From Octopus sinensis (lineage: Eukaryota): a DNA stretch of 64,000 nucleotides. The position numbers and the translations under genes are program-made. This document shows, piece after piece, positions 60-50,607 of the stretch (the first letter of the stretch is position 1; each line of letters opens with the position of its first letter). The stretch is taken from positions 14,012,001 through 14,076,000 of the forward strand of contig NC_043006.1 of NCBI RefSeq assembly GCF_006345805.1, read 5' to 3'. Under the pieces are notes generated by a model. That model was not told the origin of the DNA. It saw only the letters and a list, made by a program, of their open reading frames with translations, and made no database searches.

Positions 60-92
<33 letters not shown>

Positions 93-149
93 CAATGTCT
101 GATTAATAAATATCCAGACTGCTGCCATAGTAACAACGCTATAGCACGC

Positions 150-199
150 TATAGCATCACTTCTGAATTCGATCGGAATCGATCGGAAACATATAATTG

Positions 200-272
<73 letters not shown>

Positions 273-323
273 AGTACTCAATTATATGTTTCCGATCGAT
301 TCCGATCGAATTCAGAAGTGATG

Positions 324-328
<5 letters not shown>
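150..328. repeat. Perfect 56-bp inverted repeat around a (TA)n spacer
   Basis: 150-205 is the exact reverse complement of 273-328. Confidence 0.9.
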
Positions 329-403
<75 letters not shown>

Positions 404-512
404 CAATATTAAGGAATGGCCTTGATAGACCATTCGACCCACTAGAAAGAGCAGCTAAACTCAAACCGCTAAATAGTTGTAATTCAGAAAATAAAAACAT
501 TTGCCCTTATCA

Positions 513-610
513 TCTTTGGACTATGCATAGTTTCGACATACATATTGGCAAACCGATCTAATTAAATTAAATTAAATCTATTTGCCACTGGCCTGTCTCG
601 TCAGCAAAGA
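513..610 (-). ncRNA. Type I hammerhead ribozyme, fully canonical core
   Basis: Minus strand reads UCUUUG-CUGACGA-GACA...UGUC-GAA-ACUAUGCAUAGU-C-CAAAGA. Stem I is 6 bp, stem II has an inner UGGCAAA/UUUGCCA helix, stem III is a 12-nt palindrome, and the cleavage triplet is GUC (cut between 519 and 518). Confidence 0.85.
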
Positions 611-766
611 AGCCAGGGGAATATATATCCACGAGGCGACAGCATCGACGCCTCGAGAATATATATTCTAAATTTTCAAAATCTACCGTCACCGCGCCAA
701 CTTCTCAGCAGCAAATATATATATACACAATGTCTGATCAATGTCTGTTGCCATAGTAACAACGTT

Positions 767-1559
767 ATAGCACACAGAGCGAAGTGCTTGGCACAGACTG
801 ACCTTGAACTCTGCTGTGCAAGTGCACTAAGTTTTAACGTTCTAGCTCACTTCCGCTGTTGTTTGTAGCAGTGCTTGGAAGGAACGTGTGTAGCGTGTGA
901 TCTTCGCTTTGACCATGACAGAGAAAGTTGTCATTGTGATACCTCCTCAGATGCCAACGCAAAGTTGCAGAAAGTGTATGGAGACGTGTGTATGAGCCGC
1001 ACACAAGTGTACGAGTGGTTCAGATGTTTCCTAGAAAGCCGAAAAAATGTCGATATTGATGAACCTTCTGGGAAACCCGTAACCAGCAGAACTGAGAAAA
1101 ACATTGCAGATGTGCGTGCAGCTTTGTGAGGAAATTGTCGATTCGTCATCCATGAGTTATCAGAGGATGTGCAGATTAAGTACAGTTCAGTTCAGTCCGT
1201 TATCACTGAAGATTTGAGAATGTGGTGCGTGTCTGCCAAGTTTGTGCCAAAACTGCTTTCAGCTGACCAAAAGGACACTCGGGTTTCAATTCCACAAGAT
1301 CTCCTTGATTGTGTTGAGATCGATGAAAACTTTACGTAGGTCTCTGGGCAGGTATCATCAAGGTTTTAGCAAAATTTGATGCAGATTTTCTGCTCAACTT
1401 TTATCTATCATGATCAATGTGACGATCACACGCTACACACGTTCCTTCCAAGTACTGCTGTAAACAGCGGAAGTGAGCTAGAACGTTAAACTTAGTACGC
1501 ATGCACAGCAGAGTTCAAGGTCAATCTGTACCAAACGGCTTCACTCTGCGTGCTTTAGT
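767..1559 (+). mobile_element. Mariner-derived fold-back element with N-terminal transposase remnant
   Basis: KLQKVYGDVCMSRTQVYEWFRCF..DEPSGKPVTS...SAKFVPKLLSADQK is mariner HTH-like. It is flanked by inverted arms of about 140 bp (767-910 and 1416-1559). Confidence 0.85.
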
Positions 1560-1783
1560 TTCGTTATTATGGCAACTGTCTGGATATTTATTGATCAGAC
1601 CATGTATATACATACGACGGGTTTCCACAAAATTTTCGTCTCGCAAATTGCACAGTGTATTGGTCAAAACGTAAATATTTTACCCCTACACAATATTCTT
1701 TGCATACTGCTTCTCTTCTCAGTTAGAAATTTGAGTAACAAATGCCAAACACAAATGGTTTTTCGTTTTCATGATCCATATAT

Positions 1784-1789
1784 TTTATT
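1784..1789 (-). promoter_or_regulatory. Candidate polyadenylation signal of the Ctr gene
   Basis: AATAAA on the minus strand about 200 nt after the stop codon. The region is AT-rich, so a chance match is possible. Confidence 0.3.
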
Positions 1790-1991
1790 AAAAATTTAAC
1801 TTAAAATATTGAACATATATTCCAATACTGAAAAGAAGTAATCGGAACAAAAATAAATTTTTGTGAAAATTTTAGTGACAAATACTTCAGGTTTTGTATG
1901 AAAAATATTTAAGAACCAAAGGTTTTTCAGTTTTATCAGTGAATGTCTTAAATGTAATATGCACAGACAAAAATGCAATGTATATTTCGTC

Positions 1992-2283
1992 TTAAAATGG
2001 TGTTTCTGTTTGTTTTGTATCGACGAAATTTTTCGTATTTTCTTCTGTAGCTGAATACTTTTTCAATGTGATCATTCTTCGCTTCAAAAAAAAGCATTTG
2101 ATCCAAGGTCGAACAATGAAGAAACCGATGGCTGAGCCACTTATAACAGCTAGGAAAATCCATATATTTCCTGTCATCACACTCAGCATGAGATAATAAG
2201 AGAGTATTATTTGGCAAACATAAGCAAGAGTGCAAGAAAATTTACACGATATCGGTATGCTGTCCGGACCGCAAATATTCTTC
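1992..2283 (-). CDS. SLC31A-like (Ctr): Terminal coding exon of an SLC31/Ctr-family copper transporter (TM2, TM3, C-tail)
   Basis: Translation KNICGPDSIPISCKFSCTLAYVCQIILSYYLMLSVMTGNIWIFLAVISGSAIGFFIVRPWIK...TPF* has the Ctr TM2 MxxxM (MLSVM) and TM3 GxxxG (GSAIG) motifs. Polypyrimidine acceptor ttttgtttttcag at 2284-2296, phase 2; stop TAA at 1994-1992. Confidence 0.85.
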
Positions 2284-3143
2284 CTGAAAAACAAAATTGA
2301 ATGATGGGATAAACAGGTGAACTGTAAATAAAATTCTTTTAACTTCATGTAATAGCAATAAAATTTCTCCGACTGACTTAACGAAACAATAATCTCTGCA
2401 TGAATCGAAATGATTTCATTAGATGACGTTATGAGAATCTAATAGAAAAAAAATAAAATATTTAATGCCATGGTCAACTCCGTTACAAATAAATTTAAGC
2501 ACTTCGTTCATAAGAACAAGACCTGTAACAACATGCGCCTTCACTAGTCAGTTAAGGGGAGACAGTGTCACGTGACAACTTGCTGGGGCTGCCAGCTGGA
2601 GCCTAGTGGCAGGTATTTAAAGGGAAAAATTCAGTCAGAAAAAAAGTCAGTCTGTCACCGGCTGACACTCGCTGACGATACATCGAAGAGGCCAGGGAAC
2701 AGAAGAAAGAAGAAGAAAGAAGACATGCACCCAACACCAAAGCTGAAGACACCTCCGAAAGGGGCGGGGGGCGCCACGTCTAATCGGTAGAGGAGTAGGG
2801 GCCGAAACCGGACGTGGTTCCTCCTATGTGCCTTATTCATGCATATACTTTTATTCTTGGTTCAGTCATTGGACTGCCATCATATTGGGTTACTGTCTTG
2901 AAGGGTTTAATCGATCAAATTGACCCGAGTATTCACATTTTAAACTCTATCGGTAAGCTAAGGGAGCGTAAACAAACCAACACCAGTTGCCAAGCGGCGG
3001 GGGGGAACAAATTTCAAGCCAAGAACGCACGCGCGCGCACACACACATACACCTGTGTATGGCGCGCGCACGTTCTTGTGTGTGTGTGTGTTTGTGTGTA
3101 TTCAAGACTACTTTTAAGATTTTGCTCGAAGAACATAAATATA

Positions 3144-3551
3144 GGCGCAGGAGTGGCTTTGTGGTAAGTAGCTTGTTTACCAACCACATGGTTCCGGGTT
3201 CAGTCCCACTTCGTGGCACCTTGGGCAAGTGTCTTCTACTATAGACTCGGGCCGACCAAAGCCTTGTGAGTGGATTTGGTTGACGGAAACTGAAAGAAGC
3301 CCGTCGTATATATGTATATATATGTGTACATGTATGTATGTGTGTCTGTGTTTGTCCCCCTAGCATTGCTTGACAACCGATGCTGGTGTGTTTATGTCTC
3401 CATTACTTAGCGGTTCGGCAAAAGAGACCGATAGAATAAGTACTGGGCTTACAAAAGAATAAGTCCCGGGGTCGAGTTGCTCGATTTAAGGCGGTGCTCC
3501 AGCATGGCCGCAGTCAAATAACTGAAGCAAGTAAAAGAGAGTAAAAGAGAG
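3144..3551 (+). mobile_element. tRNA-like SINE family A (full length)
   Basis: Head ggcgcaggagtggc.gtgtggtaag..ggttcagtccc with box A/B-like motifs, central (TA/TG)n and a taaaagag tail. Other copies at about 6007-6200, 10085-10230, 19668-19742(-), 22885-23310(-), 38596-38765 and 2850-3010(-). Confidence 0.9.
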
Positions 3552-20026: not shown

Positions 20027-20984
20027 TAGTTTTATTTTTATAGCGTGCTTTCACTTCACTACCGAGCGCAGCTCTGTGTGCCTTGGGTATGTGCCGTGAT
20101 ATGTTGTGATGCTCTGATGGTTATTGTATGGAAAGTGTTCTGCGTAGGATGTGTGCAGTGCCTAGTAGTGCAATTTTCTGTATGTTATATGTGTTTGTAA
20201 GTCTTGGTGTTTTTGTTATGTATTTGTCTGAATATTTTTTTATCATGCCTAATGCACCTACTATGATAGGAATTGTTTCTGTTTTCAGATTCCACATTCT
20301 AGTTACCTCTATTTCCAGGTCTTTGTATTTTGATAGTTTCTCCATTTCTTTTAGAGACACGTTGTCATCTGCCGGTATTGATACATCAATTAGAAAGCAT
20401 TTTTTTTCTTCATGATCTCTGACAACTATATCTCGTCTGTTGGCCTTAATTTCTCTATCTGTGTGTATCGGCATATCCCAGAGTATGGTTGCTTTCTCGT
20501 TTTCTGTGACCTTTTCTGGTGTGTGCCTATACCATCTTTTTTCTGTTGTTATTCCATAATGTTGGCATAGCTTCCAATGTATGTAGGTTCCAACTCTGTC
20601 ATGTCTGTGAATATATTCCTTCTTAGCCAGGACTGGGCAGCTAGAGATAATATGATTTATTGTTTCTTGTCCATCTCCACATATTCTGCAGTTACTTGTT
20701 ATATTTCTTTTCATTACATGTTTTTGGTAATTTCTGGTGGGGAGGCTTTGGTCTTGTGCTGCAATTAAAAATCCCTCTGTCTCTGCTTTGAGTCCTGAGC
20801 TTCTCAACCATTGCTGGGATTTTTCTTTGTCTATTTCTTTTGCGTTTAGTTTAGTGCAGTATTTACCATGAAGGGGCTTTTCTTGCCATCGTTTTATCAT
20901 GGTTCGTTGCTGTTCTATTTTTAGTTTGGATTTCATTTGTTTTATAGCTTTTGTTGTTTCTTCATCATCTTCTTCTTCTTCGTG

Positions 20985-20985
<1 letters not shown>
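20024..20985 (-). mobile_element. 3' end of an R4/Dong-like RLE non-LTR retrotransposon (ORF remnant 20121-20936)
   Basis: WQEKPLHG...CRICGDGQETINHIISSC (CCHC), RHD, NRRDIVV..LIDVSIP..KLSKYKDL restriction-like endonuclease motifs; flanked by (ATT)n. Confidence 0.9.
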
Positions 20986-21065
<80 letters not shown>

Positions 21066-21204
21066 GGTTTGATTTTAGCTTTGTATTTGTACCACCCAGA
21101 GACCTCAAGAGACAACAAATTAGAAGTTCATGTTGGTGTTATTGCCTAGGGTATCACATATTTGGCTTTGCAAATTGTATTGTTATAGAGAATGTTTAAG
21201 AAAA

Positions 21205-24045: not shown

Positions 24046-24377
24046 CAACCAATTAATACAGCAGACCAAAAGTTGTTAATCAACTGAGATTATATTCATA
24101 TTAAGGAGAATGAATAATCATGTCAACAACTCTGATCAAGAAAAGTTGAGTGAGGCGATGTGGGTAAATATAGGAAATTAAATTAATCAAAAATAATCAA
24201 AATAGTTACGTTTGTGAATTTGTGTTGCAAAATTCCTGATGTGACACCGTGTGTCAAAACAGATATTGTTATATTTCAGGATGGTATTTTTTCTTTTTTT
24301 TTTTGCCAAATAAACACACGCACCATATATTCCTTCTTCACTCGTTTATTACTGTTCTTATTCTGACTGATGTCCAT

Positions 24378-24422
24378 CGTCTGGAGATCTTTCGTCACAC
24401 ATCTGTGACCTCTTCAGCGACA
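24378..24422 (-). ncRNA. Minimal type I hammerhead ribozyme
   Basis: UGUCG-CUGAAGA-G-GUCACA-GAUG-UGUGAC-GAA-AGAUCU-C-CAGACG. Intact core, 6-bp stem II, palindromic stem III AGAUCU, stem I with one bulge. An AATAAA lies about 25 nt downstream on the same strand. Confidence 0.7.
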
Positions 24423-31211: not shown

Positions 31212-31269
31212 ACATTATTGGTGAATTGAAGAAATGGAGCTGAACGCAGATTGAACAGAAATCGTTTTA

Positions 31270-31359
31270 TTTCATTCTACACGTGTTTCGAAAGGCACAA
31301 ATTACCAAAATCCGATTGAATAATGGGACCACATTGTGTCTTTCTCTTCAGGAAGAAAA
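31270..31359 (-). ncRNA. Type I hammerhead ribozyme in the left arm of the 478-bp palindrome
   Basis: Reverse-complement copy of the motif at 31541-31629, with one extra base in stem II. Confidence 0.75.
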
Positions 31360-31540
31360 AAGGAAATCCGTTGGAAAAACAAAAACAGAACAGAGGCGGA
31401 GCAAAAAACAAATCGAACTGTGCTCCTAAGAGCCCCTGGCGAAACTGATAAACAGTTTCGCCATGGGCTCTTAGGAGCACAGTTCGATTTGTTTTTTGCT
31501 CCGCCTCTGTTCTGTTTTTGTTTTTCCAACGGATTTCCTT

Positions 31541-31629
31541 TTTTCTTCCTGAAGAGAAAGACACAATGTGGTCCCATTATTCAATCGGATTTTGGTAATT
31601 GTGCCTTTCGAAACACGTGTAGAATGAAA
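31541..31629 (+). ncRNA. Type I hammerhead ribozyme in the right arm of the 478-bp palindrome
   Basis: UUUUCUUC-CUGAAGA-GAAAG(A)CACAAU...AUUGUG(C)CUUUC-GAA-ACACGUGU-A-GAAUGAAA. Intact core, palindromic stem III, GUA triplet (cut after 31621). Confidence 0.8.
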
Positions 31630-31865
31630 TAAAACGATTTCTGTTCAATCTGCGTTCAGCTCCATTTCTTCAATTCACAATAATGTTTTAATTTCAATTA
31701 TCCGCACCAACGCACGGTTGCAACGCCAGATGGTTGTACCTCCAACCGTGCTGTTTACTGCTGTGATTTTTGCTACTAAGGTATCGGTTAAACTTTTGAT
31801 TAATCTACTACAAGATTATTCATCTTTCTATTTCACATAATATATATATATATATATATATATAT

Positions 31866-42853: not shown

Positions 42854-44404
42854 CAAGGTGATATCAAAAGTTTCCCAGACTAGTTATGTTTCATAAAAAA
42901 TAACTTATTTACCTAAATAGTCACCTTGCGAACAACATCAGCACTGTCGTTGATTATCCCAGTGTCCCTGCCACTTTTGGAATACGGCCTGGAAGTCGTT
43001 TTCGTAAGCGAGTCGAGGACCTTATGCGACCTGCTCTGGATCTCGACAACGGTGTTAAAACGGCAACCTTTGAGCTGTATTTTCATCTTGCGGAAGAGAT
43101 GGAAGTCCACGGGTGCTAGATCTGCCGAATAGGGCGGATGCGCAAGCGATACAATGCAGTTTTTGGCGAGAAACTTACGATGAGGAGAGATCGGTAACAG
43201 GGCGCATTGTCGTCGTGAAGAATCCACTTCTTCGCGCTCCACATATCCGGTCGCTTTCGCCAAATGTCCTCCCTCAAACGCTTCAGAATGTCTCAGTCGA
43301 ATTCTCGATTGAGGGTGTGGCTCCAAGGGACGAATTCTTGATGTACAATACCGCAAGTGTGGAAAAAACAGTGAGCAGGCTCTTAATTGAGCTGCGGATC
43401 TATCGTGTCTTCTTCGTGTCTCTAACACTGCGACGGCTGCTGCTTCGTATCCGGGTCGCATCCGTCGACACAACTCAACATCGTGGACATGAAGAATGGG
43501 TCACCTGTGGCACGCTGACGGAGATCTTGATAGACTTCGACGCGATGTTCTTTCTTCTCGGTGGTCAGCAGGCGGGGGACAAACTTGGCAGAGACGTTAG
43601 GATTGTCTGCACGGACCCATACGACGGGCGAACAGCATCAGCAATGTCGTTGATTATCTTCCGACAATCCTCATGCACAATCTGAGGAAGGTTCTCCACA
43701 TTTCCAGGCGTGCCGCTCGTCGTAGGTCTTCCAGATCGCTCATCGTCTTCTAGGGACGTTCTTCTGTTTTTGAAATGCTCCTGCCACTGGAAACATTGAG
43801 TACGACCCATTGTTTCGTCGCTGTAATTTTGTCGAAGTATGTTCAAAGTCTCTGGAGCAGCGGTCTCGCGGTCGAGGGATCGCGGGTTCGAATCTCAAAC
43901 CGGGCGATGGGTGTGTTTATGAGCGAAAACACCTAAGCTCCATGCGGCTCCGATAGAAGGTAATGACGAACTTCTGCTGACTCTTTCACCCCAACTTTCT
44001 CTCACTCTTTCCTCCCGCATCTTGCAGCTCACCTGCGATGGACCGGCATCCCGTCCAGGTGGGGAACCTATACGCCAAGGAAACCGGGAAACCGGCCTTT
44101 ATGAGCCAGGGATGGCTCGAGAAGGAACAAACAACAAACAAACAAAAGTCTCTCTGTAGCAGACTTCCTAAGTTTAGCGCAAAATTTCAGGTTGGCTCTT
44201 TGTTCCAATTCCTTGTCCCTGGCAAAATTGCATACACGTGATCACAAAAACATAAATTTCACAACTTGCGAAGTAAAAATAGCAACGTCAGTCGACACAC
44301 TGCCTCATGAAGGTCACTGATAACTCTCACTGCGCACGCAACTGTGTTCTGCCATCTGTTGCCGCGCTACAGAACTTGTCCGGGAACTTATTAATACCAC
44401 CTCG
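42854..44404 (-). mobile_element. Near full-length degenerate mariner transposon interrupted by a SINE
   Basis: N-terminus KFCAKLRKSATETLNILRQNYSDETMGRTQCFQW..DDERSGRPTTS and C-terminus HPPYSADLAPVDFHLFRKMK. Imperfect TIRs caaggtgatatcaaaagtttcccagactagtt / aacttgtccgggaacttattaataccacctcg, with TA on the left. Confidence 0.9.
43857..44140 (+). mobile_element. 5'-truncated C2-related SINE inside the mariner
   Basis: (CAAA)n tail; TSD about aaagtctct; splits the transposase frame. Confidence 0.85.
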
Positions 44405-48019: not shown

Positions 48020-48325
48020 TAATAATAATAAAATATACATAAACTTAAGCATGATGAACACTTATAACATAAATAAAATTCATAATAAGAATAAAATTCA
48101 TAGAAATTACCACGTTTCTAAGGACACTAGTATACATGACCCCCAAAATACTGAAAACGTAAACCCCAACTATATAATTAAAGATACTAATAGGAACATA
48201 AAGATAACAATAAAAAAAACCATGATAATCAGAGTAAGACAGCTAACAATAAGGATAAGAATAACTATGATAATATAATTAATAATGATAATAACAACAT
48301 AGTAGAAAAGAAACCAATACCATGT

Positions 48326-49100
48326 ATGAGAAAAAATAACTTTTTGAATACAAATCAATGCTCGACCATGGAAGATAATGATAAAACCATTTGGATAATA
48401 ATTCCCTTTGCTAAGCATTTAAAGACGGACTTTATAAGATCTATCAGAAAGATTATAAAAAAGAATTTTTTAAACACCAGATACGCAAAAGTATTTAATA
48501 ATAAACATATCAGATTTGGATTTTCAGTTTCTCTCAACCTTTTTAGGATAATATCTTCATTTAATAAGATGGAACTAGATCAATTCTATGAAAATAAAAC
48601 TACAAAAACTGAACCTAGAACATACAAAAAGAATAATAAACTATACAATGGCATAATTAACATTATGAATTCTCTTAATAACCACAATACTTATAAATCA
48701 ACAAAATCTACAAATAGCACCATATCACCCACACATATAAATTGCAACTGTAGAAACCCGAACACTTGTAAATTAGACAGAGATTGTAAAAGGAAAAATG
48801 TTGTATACCAAGCAACAATTATAACACAGGATTCCTCTAATTATCTTTATATCGGATACACACAAAACTCAATCAAATCGCGAATTTGTAACGACGAATC
48901 GACCTTTTGGGACCAAAGAAAAATGAACAGTACTGGACTCTCAAACAAAATTTAGTACCTAAAACAAACAATGCTGATTTCTCAATTCATTGGAAAATTC
49001 TATAATCTGCACCTTCTTACAAGATTAACAATAAAATTCGTAGATTATACCTTGAAGAAAGCTGTAATATAATGAAAATAAATGGAAACCTAGTAAACCG
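48326..49100 (+). pseudogene. Penelope-like element GIY-YIG endonuclease remnant
   Basis: CNCRNPNTCKLDRDCKRKNVVYQATII...YLYIGYTQNSIKSR...STGLSNKI*YL..FSIHWKIL...RLYLEE..LVNR matches the Penelope linker and GIY-YIG pattern. It contains stops and a frameshift; no RT was seen. Confidence 0.8.
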
Positions 49101-50173: not shown

Positions 50174-50514
50174 GCAAAAATTTAGATTCAAATGAATATG
50201 ATACTTAATTTAGATGTACCAGAATTCTGTATGGTGTTATCTATATGTTTTCTACATTAATTCCTTATATGGAGCTCTGACATCCCCTTTACCCCATTTC
50301 TATAATTAGAAAATCTTTATTGTCTCCTTTCATTTGTTCTTCCCTCTCAGAACCTTACAGTAGTCTGGAACAACTGAATCTTAGTCAGTCAGTTGATGGG
50401 CTCCGCTACCTCAAATGTTCTTAAAATTTAAATCCACATCTTTGTCTATATATCTACCTTCTCTATAACGTTGCCGCTTGATATGATAATTTTTGTATTA
50501 ATGGAAAACCTCTA

Positions 50515-50607
50515 TAATTGGCTGATGAGTGCTCAGCATTTTTAAACTGTCGCAATACTTACAACATTTAATCAAATGATGTAGTACGAAACGATCGTAC
50601 CAAATTA
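50515..50607 (+). ncRNA. Type I hammerhead ribozyme
   Basis: UAAUUGG-CUGAUGA-GUGCU...AGUAC-GAA-ACGAUCGU-A-CCAA(A)UUA. Intact core, palindromic stem III, GUA triplet (cut after 50599). Confidence 0.75.

What the first reader, a model, noticed from the sequence alone, without database searches (positions are those of the whole stretch)
513..610. Fully canonical hammerhead in sense orientation 1.4 kb downstream of the Ctr stop codon
Seen: no core deviation, GUC triplet, 6-bp stem I extendable by CCC/GGG after an internal loop, and a 12-nt palindromic stem III long enough to fold as a monomer hairpin. It lies on the same strand as the copper transporter. Established: ribozymes in 3' UTRs or just downstream of genes can destabilise mRNA or aid termination. 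Inference: if the 3' UTR or read-through RNA reaches 519, it would be cut. It may equally be a recent neutral insertion.
Basis: partly seen in the sequence, partly recalled or inferred. Interest (0 to 1): 0.7.

Follow-up and report, generated by a model that had tools for sequence, protein, structure and literature searches.

The report
Transposon-type hammerhead ribozyme in octopus
A genuine hammerhead (self-cutting RNA) motif lies downstream of an octopus copper-transporter gene, but it is one of several carried by short insertion-like sequences here and is missing from the same spot in a related octopus, so it is most likely an ordinary mobile-element relic, not a regulator of the gene.

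Summary
Window 610->513 (minus strand) is a complete type I hammerhead: 6-bp helix I, CUGACGA, G10.1-C11.1, GAA, 12-nt palindromic helix III, GUC, with cleavage between 519 and 518. It is on the strand of the Ctr gene, 1.38 kb past its stop codon. Chance is very unlikely. Rfam scores it below threshold (19.6 bits against 34) because helix II is 63 nt long.

The window is Octopus sinensis. The motif sits in a 315-nt, 39% GC, strongly self-paired unit. That unit lies in a 626-bp block bounded by direct repeats of a mariner-type element's end. Joining the two flanks reproduces the O. bimaculoides sequence without a gap, so the block is lineage-specific.

Four more intact-core type I hammerhead motifs turned up in the DNA available: three in the window and one in O. 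bimaculoides. All have a palindromic helix III and a 54-63-nt helix II, and their flanks are unrelated.

The only two AATAAA signals lie 203 and 400 nt after the Ctr stop, about 1 kb before the ribozyme.

Verdict: a retrozyme/Penelope-type mobile-element hammerhead, probably neutral for Ctr. Only the long helix II is unusual. Self-cleavage and genome-wide copy number were not tested.

The parts
605..610 (-). Helix I, 5' strand (UCUUUG)
   Evidence: Six Watson-Crick pairs with 513-518
598..604 (-). Catalytic core C3-A9 (CUGACGA)
   Evidence: Read directly from the sequence; aligned to the RF00163 consensus
535..597 (-). Helix II, 63 nt. GACA/UGUC (G10.1-C11.1), an internal loop, then a 42-nt distal hairpin (UGGCAAAU...GUUUGCCA).
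   Evidence: Folds alone at -22.7 kcal/mol, z = -5.5 against shuffles. This is the 57-nt insertion relative to the Rfam model.
532..534 (-). Core G12 A13 A14
520..531 (-). Helix III: ACUAUGCAUAGU, a perfect 12-nt palindrome (A15.1...U16.1)
   Evidence: Coral (ACAGUACUGU) and mussel (ACGCGCGU) retrozyme hammerheads show the same kind of palindrome (PMC7229834 Suppl. Table 2).
518..519 (-). Predicted cleavage site: after C17 (519), before C1.1 (518); triplet GUC = 521-519
   Evidence: Position worked out from the motif. Cleavage itself was not tested.
513..518 (-). Helix I, 3' strand (CAAAGA)
503..512 (-). 3' side of loop 1 (UGAUA) and distal helix I (AGGG)
   Evidence: Constrained fold
611..619 (-). 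5' side of loop 1 (GGCU) and distal helix I (CCCU)
   Evidence: Constrained fold
399..713 (-). 315-nt unit that carries the hammerhead, between a short (TA)5 tract and (TA)37
   Evidence: GC 39%. MFE -106.2 kcal/mol against shuffles -77.1 +/- 4.8, z = -6.05. No other copy in the window, L001 or L002.
119..744 (.). 626-bp block present in O. sinensis and absent from O. bimaculoides: partial repeat of the mariner end, the hammerhead unit, (TA)37, a 179-bp palindrome, and the second repeat
   Evidence: Synteny break. Joining the two flanks aligns with O. bimaculoides without a gap. The O. bimaculoides gap at this spot is the minimal N10, while other gaps in that locus run from 157 to 3,278 N.
716..773 (.). 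Direct repeat, copy 1 (end of the mariner-type terminal inverted repeat, with a 9-11-nt deletion)
   Evidence: the repeat finder families D5 and D6: 29 nt at 93% and 31 nt at 77% identity to copy 2
77..147 (.). Direct repeat, copy 2. This is the copy collinear with O. bimaculoides.
325..398 (.). (TA)37 microsatellite next to the 3' end of the unit
150..328 (.). 179-bp palindrome (89-nt arms, 93% complementary) centred on (TA)n
   Evidence: the repeat finder I1
725..1612 (.). Mariner-type non-autonomous element with roughly 200-bp terminal inverted repeats, lying between Ctr and the ribozyme; present in both species
   Evidence: Inverted self-matches. HTH_48 domain of Mos1 transposase: weak in ORF 875-1129; E = 8.6e-16 in one of the 98 ORFs scanned, whose identity the tool did not report. 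89-90% identity to L001.
1784..1789 (-). First AATAAA after the Ctr stop (203 nt downstream)
1587..1592 (-). Second and last AATAAA before the ribozyme (400 nt after the stop, inside the mariner repeat)
1992..2283 (-). Last coding exon of Ctr ('probable low affinity copper uptake protein 2')
   Evidence: Pfam Ctr
50518..50603 (+). Hammerhead B: CUGAUGA, 59-nt helix II, helix III ACGAUCGU, GUA triplet
   Evidence: RF00163 18.6 bits; descriptor hit
31546..31624 (+). Hammerhead D1: CUGAAGA, 54-nt helix II, helix III ACACGUGU, GUA triplet
   Evidence: RF00163 14.9 bits; right arm of a 460-bp palindrome
31275..31354 (-). Hammerhead D2: inverted twin of D1, in the sense orientation within a Ctr intron

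Best explanation
Window 513-610 (minus strand) is a true type I hammerhead ribozyme motif. It belongs to a short, AT-rich, highly self-paired, non-coding insertion of the kind that carries hammerheads in animal genomes: non-LTR retrozymes and Penelope-like-element derivatives.

Shown here:
- The motif is complete and statistically non-random.
- It lies in a 315-nt structured unit inside a 626-bp block bounded by a roughly 60-bp duplication of the target.
- O. bimaculoides has the empty site.
- Several unrelated insertions near (TA)n tracts in the same locus carry hammerheads of the same build: intact core, palindromic helix III, 54-63-nt helix II.

Inferred:
- The unit arrived by retrotransposition or by a microsatellite-associated rearrangement after the split of the two Octopus lineages.
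- In its parent element the ribozyme cuts long or multimeric transcripts to unit length, leaving 5'-OH and 2',3'-cyclic phosphate ends that a tRNA ligase can circularise.
- As a single copy here it has no role for the host. It would cut only the rare Ctr read-through RNA, or RNA from some other transcription, that crosses it. The cut falls between 519 and 518, most likely during transcription, because the finished RNA prefers another fold.
For: Motif and statistics.

Species and orthologous locus: the window is 100% identical to O. sinensis GCA_006345805.1. The O. bimaculoides ortholog aligns through the Ctr exon and the mariner element, then breaks at window 716. The joined flanks align without a gap. 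The O. bimaculoides gap at that spot is the minimal N10.

Flanking direct repeats.

Unit properties: GC 39% and z = -6.05.

Other copies: B, D1/D2 and C have intact cores. Their helix III sequences are palindromic and differ from one another, and helices I and II also differ in sequence. Helix II is 59, 54/55 and 63 nt. C is absent from O. sinensis and D from O. bimaculoides. In the window, A, B and D each lie within 250 nt of a (TA)>=8 tract; 20% of random positions do.

Literature:
- Canonical metazoan type I hammerheads have a 6-bp helix I, a 4-bp helix II and a palindromic helix III. They occur in retrozymes and Penelope-like elements, often as dispersed single motifs or as inverted pairs 100-700 bp apart (PMC4209133; PMC7229834; PMC7761336).
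- Penelope-like elements favour (TA)n targets (PMC8557442).
- O. vulgaris has recently active Penelope families (PMC13282606).
Against: - No second copy of the 315-nt unit and no tandem array was found in about 112 kb of Octopus DNA. Family membership of the unit itself is therefore not shown.
- No reverse transcriptase or GIY-YIG ORF is nearby.
- Helix II is far longer than in described retrozyme or Penelope-type hammerheads, and loop 2 is replaced by an internal loop, so the usual loop 1-loop 2 contact is uncertain.
- The hammerhead fold is not the minimum-energy fold: -34.2 against -36.8 kcal/mol in 131 nt, and -98.3 against -106.2 in the unit.
- A roughly 60-bp target duplication is long.
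- Without an outgroup, loss in O. bimaculoides by recombination between the two repeats cannot be excluded.
- Self-cleavage was not tested.
Confidence: 0.75

Rival explanations
1. A co-opted host element. The ribozyme cuts Ctr read-through or nascent RNA downstream of the poly(A) site. This gives an entry point for 5'-3' exonuclease and helps Pol II to terminate, or trims long 3' UTR isoforms.
For: It is in the sense orientation, 1.38 kb past the stop, with an intact core and the optimal GUC triplet. It is the best-formed of the five motifs and the only one whose helix III can close as a monomer hairpin. No one-mismatch core variants were seen.
Against: It is absent from the orthologous O. bimaculoides site. 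Two AATAAA signals lie 0.98-1.18 kb upstream, with none closer. Similar motifs occur in both orientations at unrelated places in the locus. No transcript evidence was available.
Confidence: 0.06
2. An active small-RNA locus. The unit is transcribed in its own right, or with other copies, and yields self-cleaved linear and circular RNAs as retrozymes do. It is then a live non-autonomous retroelement, not a relic.
For: The core is intact and the unit is strongly self-paired (z = -6.05). GC is low. A palindromic helix III allows dimeric ribozymes (PMC4209133). Recently active Penelope families exist in the sister species.
Against: This is a single unit. One cleavage site cannot release a unit-length RNA, and no tandem partner exists. 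No promoter or expression evidence could be obtained, and no other copy of the unit lies in 112 kb.
Confidence: 0.14
3. A chance match. An AT-rich, hairpin-rich region between microsatellites happens to have hammerhead core letters at a three-way junction.
For: The Rfam score is below threshold (19.6 bits against 34). The 63-nt helix II is atypical, and wide helix-II spans are where random hits fall: the decoy median is 60 nt within an allowed span of up to 120. My rough estimate from base composition is about 0.3 strict hits per 2.7-Gb genome; this is an inference, not a tool result. The local sequence is unusually rich in palindromes.
Against: The expected count per window is at most 0.0024-0.0045 under both the Markov and the decoy-core nulls, against 2 observed with the relaxed (at least 4 bp) descriptor; the at-least-3-bp descriptor gave 6 real-core hits (5 of them credible motifs) across the three sequences against a decoy mean of 0.10. 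All five motifs share features the descriptors did not require: G at 10.1, GAAAC, a fully palindromic helix III, and helix II lengths confined to 54-63 nt.
Confidence: 0.04

Closest known systems
Canonical type I hammerheads of metazoan non-LTR retrozymes (coral Acropora millepora, mussel Mytilus galloprovincialis; PMC7229834)
   Same: Type I topology; CUGANGA / GAAAY / RUH core; 6-bp helix I followed by an internal loop; 4-bp proximal helix II with G10.1-C11.1; fully palindromic helix III (coral ACAGUACUGU, mussel ACGCGCGU, here ACUAUGCAUAGU). The host unit is a few hundred nt long, low in GC and highly self-paired.
   Different: No tandem repeat at this locus. Helix II carries a further 55 nt where those ribozymes have a 4-6-nt loop 2. 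No circular RNA or copy-number evidence.
Minimal hammerheads of Penelope-like elements and Terminons (PMC4209133; PMC8557442)
   Same: Dispersed single motifs in non-coding DNA; inverted pairs 100-700 bp apart (as D1/D2); palindromic positions 15.2/16.2; conserved G10.1-C11.1; strong sequence differences between copies; association with (TA)n.
   Different: Those motifs lack helix III or have a very short one. They have a 7-8-bp helix II with a small loop and an unpaired base after A9. None of that type was found here. No RT or GIY-YIG ORF is nearby.
Rfam RF00163 Hammerhead_1
   Same: Full-length alignment to all 45 model positions, with core and helix-closing bases matching the consensus.
   Different: 19.6 bits, below the gathering score of 34, because of the 57-nt insertion in helix II. 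Invisible in whole-window scans.
Schistosoma Sm-alpha SINE-like element with a hammerhead (from my own knowledge; cited in PMC4209133)
   Same: A dispersed AT-rich element of about 330 bp carrying one type I hammerhead.
   Different: No convincing Pol III A/B boxes were seen on visual inspection, and no tRNA-like part was found.
Host-conserved hammerheads: the discontinuous hammerhead in mammalian CLEC2 3' UTRs and the intronic HH9/HH10 (mentioned in PMC7761336)
   Same: A sense-strand ribozyme in or beyond a gene's 3' region that could cut the transcript.
   Different: Those are conserved across species and lie inside the transcript. This one is absent from the nearest available relative and lies about 1 kb beyond the last poly(A) signal.

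Membership tests
Hammerhead ribozyme, type I | Conserved core: C3 U4 G5 A6 N7 G8 A9, G12 A13 A14, A15.1-U16.1, H17 | tested here: met
   CUGACGA, GAA, A-U and C17, read from the sequence
Hammerhead ribozyme, type I | Three helices around the core, with helix I open (type I order: I-5', core, II, GAA, III, H, I-3') | tested here: met
   Helix I 6 bp; helix II 4 bp plus a distal rod; helix III 4 bp as a monomer or 12 bp as a dimer
Hammerhead ribozyme, type I | Score at or above the Rfam RF00163 gathering threshold (34 bits) | tested here: not met
   19.6 bits in a 136-nt scan; no hit in the whole-window or 601-nt scans. The shortfall is explained by the 57-nt helix II insertion.
Hammerhead ribozyme, type I | Loop 1-loop 2 tertiary contact at the usual distances (helix I 6 bp, helix II 4 bp) | tested here: inconclusive
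   The distances are right (6 bp and 4 bp), but loop 2 is an internal loop closed by a 42-nt hairpin. Contact nucleotides cannot be judged from sequence.
Hammerhead ribozyme, type I | Mg2+-dependent self-cleavage at H17 | not testable with these tools
   Needs in vitro transcription. The predicted hammerhead fold is 2.6-7.9 kcal/mol above the MFE.
Metazoan non-LTR retrozyme | Head-to-tail tandem repeats of a 170-400-bp monomer, each with a type I hammerhead | tested here: not met
   A single unit, with no tandem partner
Metazoan non-LTR retrozyme | Low GC (<45-50%) and a highly self-paired monomer | tested here: met
   GC 39%; z = -6.05
Metazoan non-LTR retrozyme | Multi-copy family in the genome; expressed as linear and circular RNA | not testable with these tools
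   No eukaryotic genome or transcriptome collection was searchable. No second copy in about 112 kb.
Penelope-like element pseudo-LTR hammerhead | Lies in a repeat flanking an RT plus GIY-YIG ORF | tested here: not met
   Pfam scan of 98 ORFs of at least 95 aa from the window, L001 and the extra part of L002 found no RVT or GIY-YIG domain, only zf-RVT from a LINE
Penelope-like element pseudo-LTR hammerhead | Minimal architecture: no or very short helix III, helix II 7-8 bp, unpaired base after A9 | tested here: not met
Penelope-like element pseudo-LTR hammerhead | Insertion into microsatellites such as (TA)n, often with tandem or inverted partial copies | tested here: inconclusive
   A, B and D lie within 250 nt of a (TA)>=8 tract, against 20% of random positions. 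D is an inverted pair. A has a palindrome next to it that carries no hammerhead.
Host-conserved gene-associated hammerhead (CLEC2 3' UTR type) | Conserved at the orthologous position in related species | tested here: not met
   O. bimaculoides shows the empty site
Host-conserved gene-associated hammerhead (CLEC2 3' UTR type) | Lies inside the mature or regularly made transcript | not testable with these tools
   No transcript data. The AATAAA signals are 0.98 and 1.18 kb upstream.

The most novel reading that the evidence does not exclude
Octopus genomes may hold a distinct and abundant class of type I hammerheads. In this class the usual 4-6-nt loop 2 is replaced by a rod, giving a helix II of about 54-63 nt. 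These motifs fall below Rfam's threshold. They sit in short insertions of differing sequence near (TA)n tracts, often as inverted pairs, and they turn over between species. Five such motifs were found in about 112 kb. If that density held genome-wide there would be tens of thousands of copies, some of them in the sense orientation inside introns and gene tails, where they could cut host RNA.
Probability: 0.3. Interest if true: 0.5.

Novelty: new member of a known kind. Interest (0 to 1): 0.3.

Why it matters
For the Ctr gene it probably does not matter. The ribozyme is a lineage-specific passenger about 1 kb beyond the last poly(A) signal.

The case has some use as a warning. Threshold-based Rfam scans miss every hammerhead in this window, so cephalopod hammerhead content may be under-counted.

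The shared long helix II, if it holds genome-wide, would be a structural variant worth testing for activity without the classical loop-loop contact. It would also add cephalopods to the animals in which hammerhead-bearing retroelements are turning over. In the papers I could search I found no description of hammerheads in Octopus.

Tried and rejected
- Rfam at gathering threshold on the whole window, and an E-value scan of 601 nt, found no hammerhead. Only scans of about 135-150 nt showed RF00163. Motif C gave no Rfam hit at all.
- A blastn of 401-720 against the window and both loci found no second copy of the unit.
- Exact look-ups of the two small ORFs overlapping the unit found nothing on record.
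- A metagenome pattern scan (CTGANGA...GAAACTATGCATAGTC) gave one hit. It has no helix I and looks coding, so I rejected it as chance.
- ARAGORN found no tRNA-like part.
- I guessed that ORF 48326-48955 was a Penelope GIY-YIG nuclease. There was no Pfam hit and no homologue, so I dropped the idea.
- I used the LINE RT ORF to try to reach more Octopus DNA. Only two Octopus-like hits came back, on contigs of about 1 kb, which were of no use.
- I planned a covariance model of A, B and C, but MAFFT misaligned the 5' core. I used descriptors with decoy-core controls instead.
- Local alignment of the A and B flanks was no better than shuffles. The C and D flanks have no relatives.
- One-mismatch cores gave no hits, and the Penelope-type minimal descriptor found nothing new.
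- The loose type III hit at 50493-50594 is better read as type I motif B.
- The hit at 43679-43814 has 3 bp per helix and an 83-nt helix II, and I treated it as chance.

Full report
**The observation**

On the minus strand, window 610->513 reads UCUUUG CUGACGA G-ACA...UGU-C GAA ACUAUGCAUAGU C CAAAGA. Every invariant hammerhead position is present: C3-A9, G12-A14, A15.1-U16.1 and C17. G10.1-C11.1 closes helix II. Helix I is six Watson-Crick pairs and continues as CCCU/AGGG after a 4x5-nt internal loop. Helix III is a perfect 12-nt palindrome that can close as 4 bp plus a UGCA loop. The predicted cut is between 519 and 518.

The Ctr gene is on the same strand. Its last exon (about 2283->1992) is 95% identical to O. 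bimaculoides 'probable low affinity copper uptake protein 2'. The ribozyme therefore starts 1,382 nt after the stop codon.

**Is it more than chance?**

- A type I descriptor found this site and no other in the window. It found none in 400 Markov-1 window equivalents.
- A relaxed descriptor (at least 4 bp per helix, loopless palindromes allowed) gave 8 hits in 3,285 random window equivalents, or 0.0024 per window, against 2 observed.
- Real DNA has more hairpins than a Markov chain. I therefore kept the octopus sequence and permuted the core letters instead. 3,780 decoy cores gave a mean of 0.0045 hits per window.
- With at least 3 bp per helix, the real core gave 6 hits in the three sequences, against a decoy mean of 0.10.

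Rfam is less generous. It reports nothing at gathering threshold or in a 601-nt scan. In a 136-nt scan, RF00163 Hammerhead_1 aligns over all 45 model positions at exactly 513-610(-), but with 19.6 bits against a threshold of 34. The deficit comes from 57 nt in helix II where the model expects 8.

**Where the window comes from, and the orthologous site**

The Ctr protein cluster led to two loci. L002 (O. sinensis GCA_006345805.1, chromosome CM016868.1) is 100% identical to the window. L001 is the O. bimaculoides ortholog.

O. bimaculoides aligns at 89-90% identity through the Ctr exon and through a mariner-type element with roughly 200-bp terminal repeats (window about 725-1612). The alignment stops at window 716 and resumes about 1.2 kb further on in O. 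sinensis.

In O. sinensis the last 60 bp or so of the mariner repeat occurs twice, at window 773-716 and at 147-77. Between the two copies lie, in order, a short (TA)5 tract, a 315-nt unit holding the ribozyme, (TA)37, and a 179-bp palindrome.

I joined the sequence before the first repeat copy to the sequence after the second. The result aligns with O. bimaculoides without a gap, straight into the shared (GT)n tract.

O. bimaculoides has an assembly gap at this spot, but it is the minimal N10. Other gaps in that locus are sized from 157 to 3,278 N, and the two sides of this gap repeat the same 25 nt. A hidden 600-bp insert is therefore unlikely.

The block is thus present in one lineage and absent in the other. 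Without an outgroup I cannot say whether it was gained in one lineage or lost in the other through the repeats. Gain is the simpler reading.

**The unit**

The 315 nt (window 713->399) have 39% GC. They fold at -106.2 kcal/mol, against -77.1 +/- 4.8 for shuffles (z = -6.05). Helix II alone is a closed 63-nt rod (z = -5.5).

The hammerhead fold is not the minimum-energy fold: -34.2 against -36.8 kcal/mol in 131 nt, and -98.3 against -106.2 in the full unit. This is usual for ribozymes that act during transcription, but it is also a reason for caution about activity.

No tRNA-like part was found. There is no second copy of the unit in the window, L001 or L002.

**It is not alone**

Narrow Rfam scans and the descriptors brought out more type I motifs with intact cores:

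| Motif | Location | Core | Helix II | Helix III | Triplet | RF00163 |
|---|---|---|---|---|---|---|
| A | window 610-513 (-) | CUGACGA | 63 nt | ACUAUGCAUAGU | GUC | 19.6 bits |
| B | window 50518-50603 (+) | CUGAUGA | 59 nt | ACGAUCGU | GUA | 18.6 bits |
| D1 | window 31546-31624 (+) | CUGAAGA | 54 nt | ACACGUGU | GUA | 14.9 bits |
| D2 | window 31354-31275 (-) | CUGAAGA | 55 nt | ACACGUGU | GUA | not scanned |
| C | L001 24288-24379 (+), O. bimaculoides | CUGAAGA | 63 nt | ACGAUCGU | GUA | no hit |

- D1 and D2 are the two arms of a 460-bp near-perfect palindrome inside a Ctr intron, flanked by (TA)n.
- C lies in an intron, next to a partial direct repeat 315 bp upstream and between 185-bp inverted repeats.
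- All five share G at 10.1, GAAAC, and a perfectly palindromic helix III.
- Helices I, II and III differ in sequence between loci while keeping their pairing.
- Helix II lengths all fall in a 10-nt range, although the descriptor allowed spans up to about 120 nt. Decoy hits spread from 14 to 115 nt (5th to 95th percentile).
- The flanks of A, B, C and D are unrelated.
- C is missing from O. sinensis and D from O. bimaculoides.
- In the window, A, B and D each lie within 250 nt of a (TA)>=8 tract, as do only 20% of random positions.
- No copies with a one-mismatch core were found, and no short-helix-II Penelope-type minimal motifs.

**Comparison with what is known**

Cervera and de la Peña describe the canonical metazoan type I hammerhead as having a 6-bp helix I, a 4-bp helix II and a short palindromic helix III. 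They note conserved G10.1-C11.1, strong sequence differences between copies, many dispersed single motifs, and inverted pairs 100-700 bp apart (PMC4209133).

Coral and mussel retrozyme ribozymes have fully palindromic helices III, ACAGUACUGU and ACGCGCGU. They sit in 224-353-nt, low-GC, self-paired monomers (PMC7229834).

Penelope-like elements prefer microsatellite targets such as (TA)n and form tandem or inverted partial copies (PMC8557442). [quoted passage not shown] O. vulgaris has 31 Penelope-like families with recently active copies (PMC13282606).

Motif A fits this world in its core, helix I, proximal helix II, helix III and the character of its unit. It does not meet the formal definitions:
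- There is no tandem array, so it is not a retrozyme locus in the strict sense.
- There is no RT or GIY-YIG ORF nearby.
- It does not have the minimal Penelope architecture.

In short, it works like a mobile-element hammerhead, but I cannot file it in a named element family.

**Relation to Ctr**

On the Ctr strand, the only AATAAA signals between the stop codon and the ribozyme are at 1789-1784 and 1592-1587. These are 203 and 400 nt after the stop. The ribozyme lies 0.98-1.18 kb beyond them, past the mariner element.

Only read-through or post-cleavage nascent RNA would contain it. A cut there could, in principle, help termination. Lack of conservation, and the presence of equivalent motifs in both orientations elsewhere in the locus, make a selected role unlikely. 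No transcript data were available, so this remains an inference.

**Verdict**

The motif is real. It is the best-formed of a small local population of hammerheads, and it is most likely a lineage-specific mobile-element passenger (confidence 0.75).

| Rival reading | Confidence |
|---|---|
| Live retrozyme-like RNA locus | 0.14 |
| Co-opted Ctr terminator or UTR cutter | 0.06 |
| Chance motif | 0.04 |

The one feature that is not routine is the shared 54-63-nt helix II, which also hides these motifs from Rfam. Whether this marks a cephalopod-wide variant class needs a genome-wide scan that I could not run. No searchable collection here holds eukaryotic genomes, and attempts to reach more Octopus DNA through protein look-ups gave only the two Ctr loci.

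Noticed in passing
window 50518-50603 (+): A second type I hammerhead motif (B): CUGAUGA, 59-nt helix II, loopless palindromic helix III ACGAUCGU, GUA triplet. Helix I is 4 bp, a bulged A, then 3 bp. RF00163 gives 18.6 bits. It lies about 12.4 kb upstream of the Ctr start codon, antisense to Ctr, between (TA)n tracts. Its helix II does not fold as a closed rod (z = -1.5), so it may be decayed.
   Followed up: partly
window 31221-31678 (hammerheads at 31546-31624 + and 31354-31275 -): A 460-bp near-perfect palindrome (arms 96-99% complementary, 5 nt apart) in a Ctr intron, flanked by (TA)n. Each arm carries a type I hammerhead motif. The minus-strand copy is in the sense orientation relative to the Ctr pre-mRNA. 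The palindrome is absent from the O. bimaculoides locus. In RNA the two arms would pair with each other and probably mask both ribozymes.
   Followed up: partly
L001 23692-24570 (O. bimaculoides, Ctr intron): Hammerhead motif C (24288-24379) sits in a contig island between two assembly gaps. A 165-bp partial direct repeat lies exactly 315 bp upstream. That repeat holds only the 5' half of a hammerhead (CUGAGGA plus the start of helix II). 185-bp inverted repeats bracket the whole. C has the same helix III and triplet (ACGAUCGU-A) as motif B in O. sinensis, although the flanks are unrelated.
   Followed up: partly
window 725-1612: A mariner-type non-autonomous element with roughly 200-bp terminal inverted repeats and remnants of a Mos1-type HTH_48 domain. 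It lies directly downstream of Ctr, is shared with O. bimaculoides at about 89% identity, and carries the second AATAAA after the Ctr stop.
   Followed up: partly
window 150-328: A 179-bp palindrome (89-nt arms, 93% complementary) centred on (TA)n, next to the hammerhead unit and inside the same lineage-specific block. It has no hammerhead and no relatives in the DNA available. Its origin is unexplained: it could be a foldback element or a microsatellite-driven inverted duplication.
   Followed up: no
L002 48096-48510 (just beyond window position 1): About 415 bp present in O. sinensis and absent from O. bimaculoides. It starts with a poly-T run, so it looks like a retroposed element with a poly(A) tail on the other strand, and it again lies between (TA)n tracts. 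It contains CGACGAG...CGAAAC, which resembles a hammerhead core but is not one.
   Followed up: no
window 48194-48952 (+): A 253-codon open frame (ATG ORF 48326-48955) with a CxC...VVYQ...YIG pattern that I first took for a Penelope GIY-YIG nuclease. It has no Pfam hit and no homologue among 5.8 billion proteins, so its identity is unknown.
   Followed up: yes
window 20124-21074 (-): A LINE reverse-transcriptase C-terminal fragment (zf-RVT) in a Ctr intron. Apart from two closer hits of unstated origin (91% and 79% identity, contigs of about 1 kb), its relatives are 50-60% identical proteins, the named ones from echinoderms, corals and a shrimp. The family is therefore widespread.
   Followed up: partly
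window 43679-43814 (+): The weakest descriptor hit: 3 bp in each helix, an 83-nt helix II and a non-palindromic helix III, in a region of overlapping long ORFs on both strands (one, at 42913-43473 on the minus strand, looked mariner-like to me but had no Pfam hit). I judged it a chance match.
   Followed up: no
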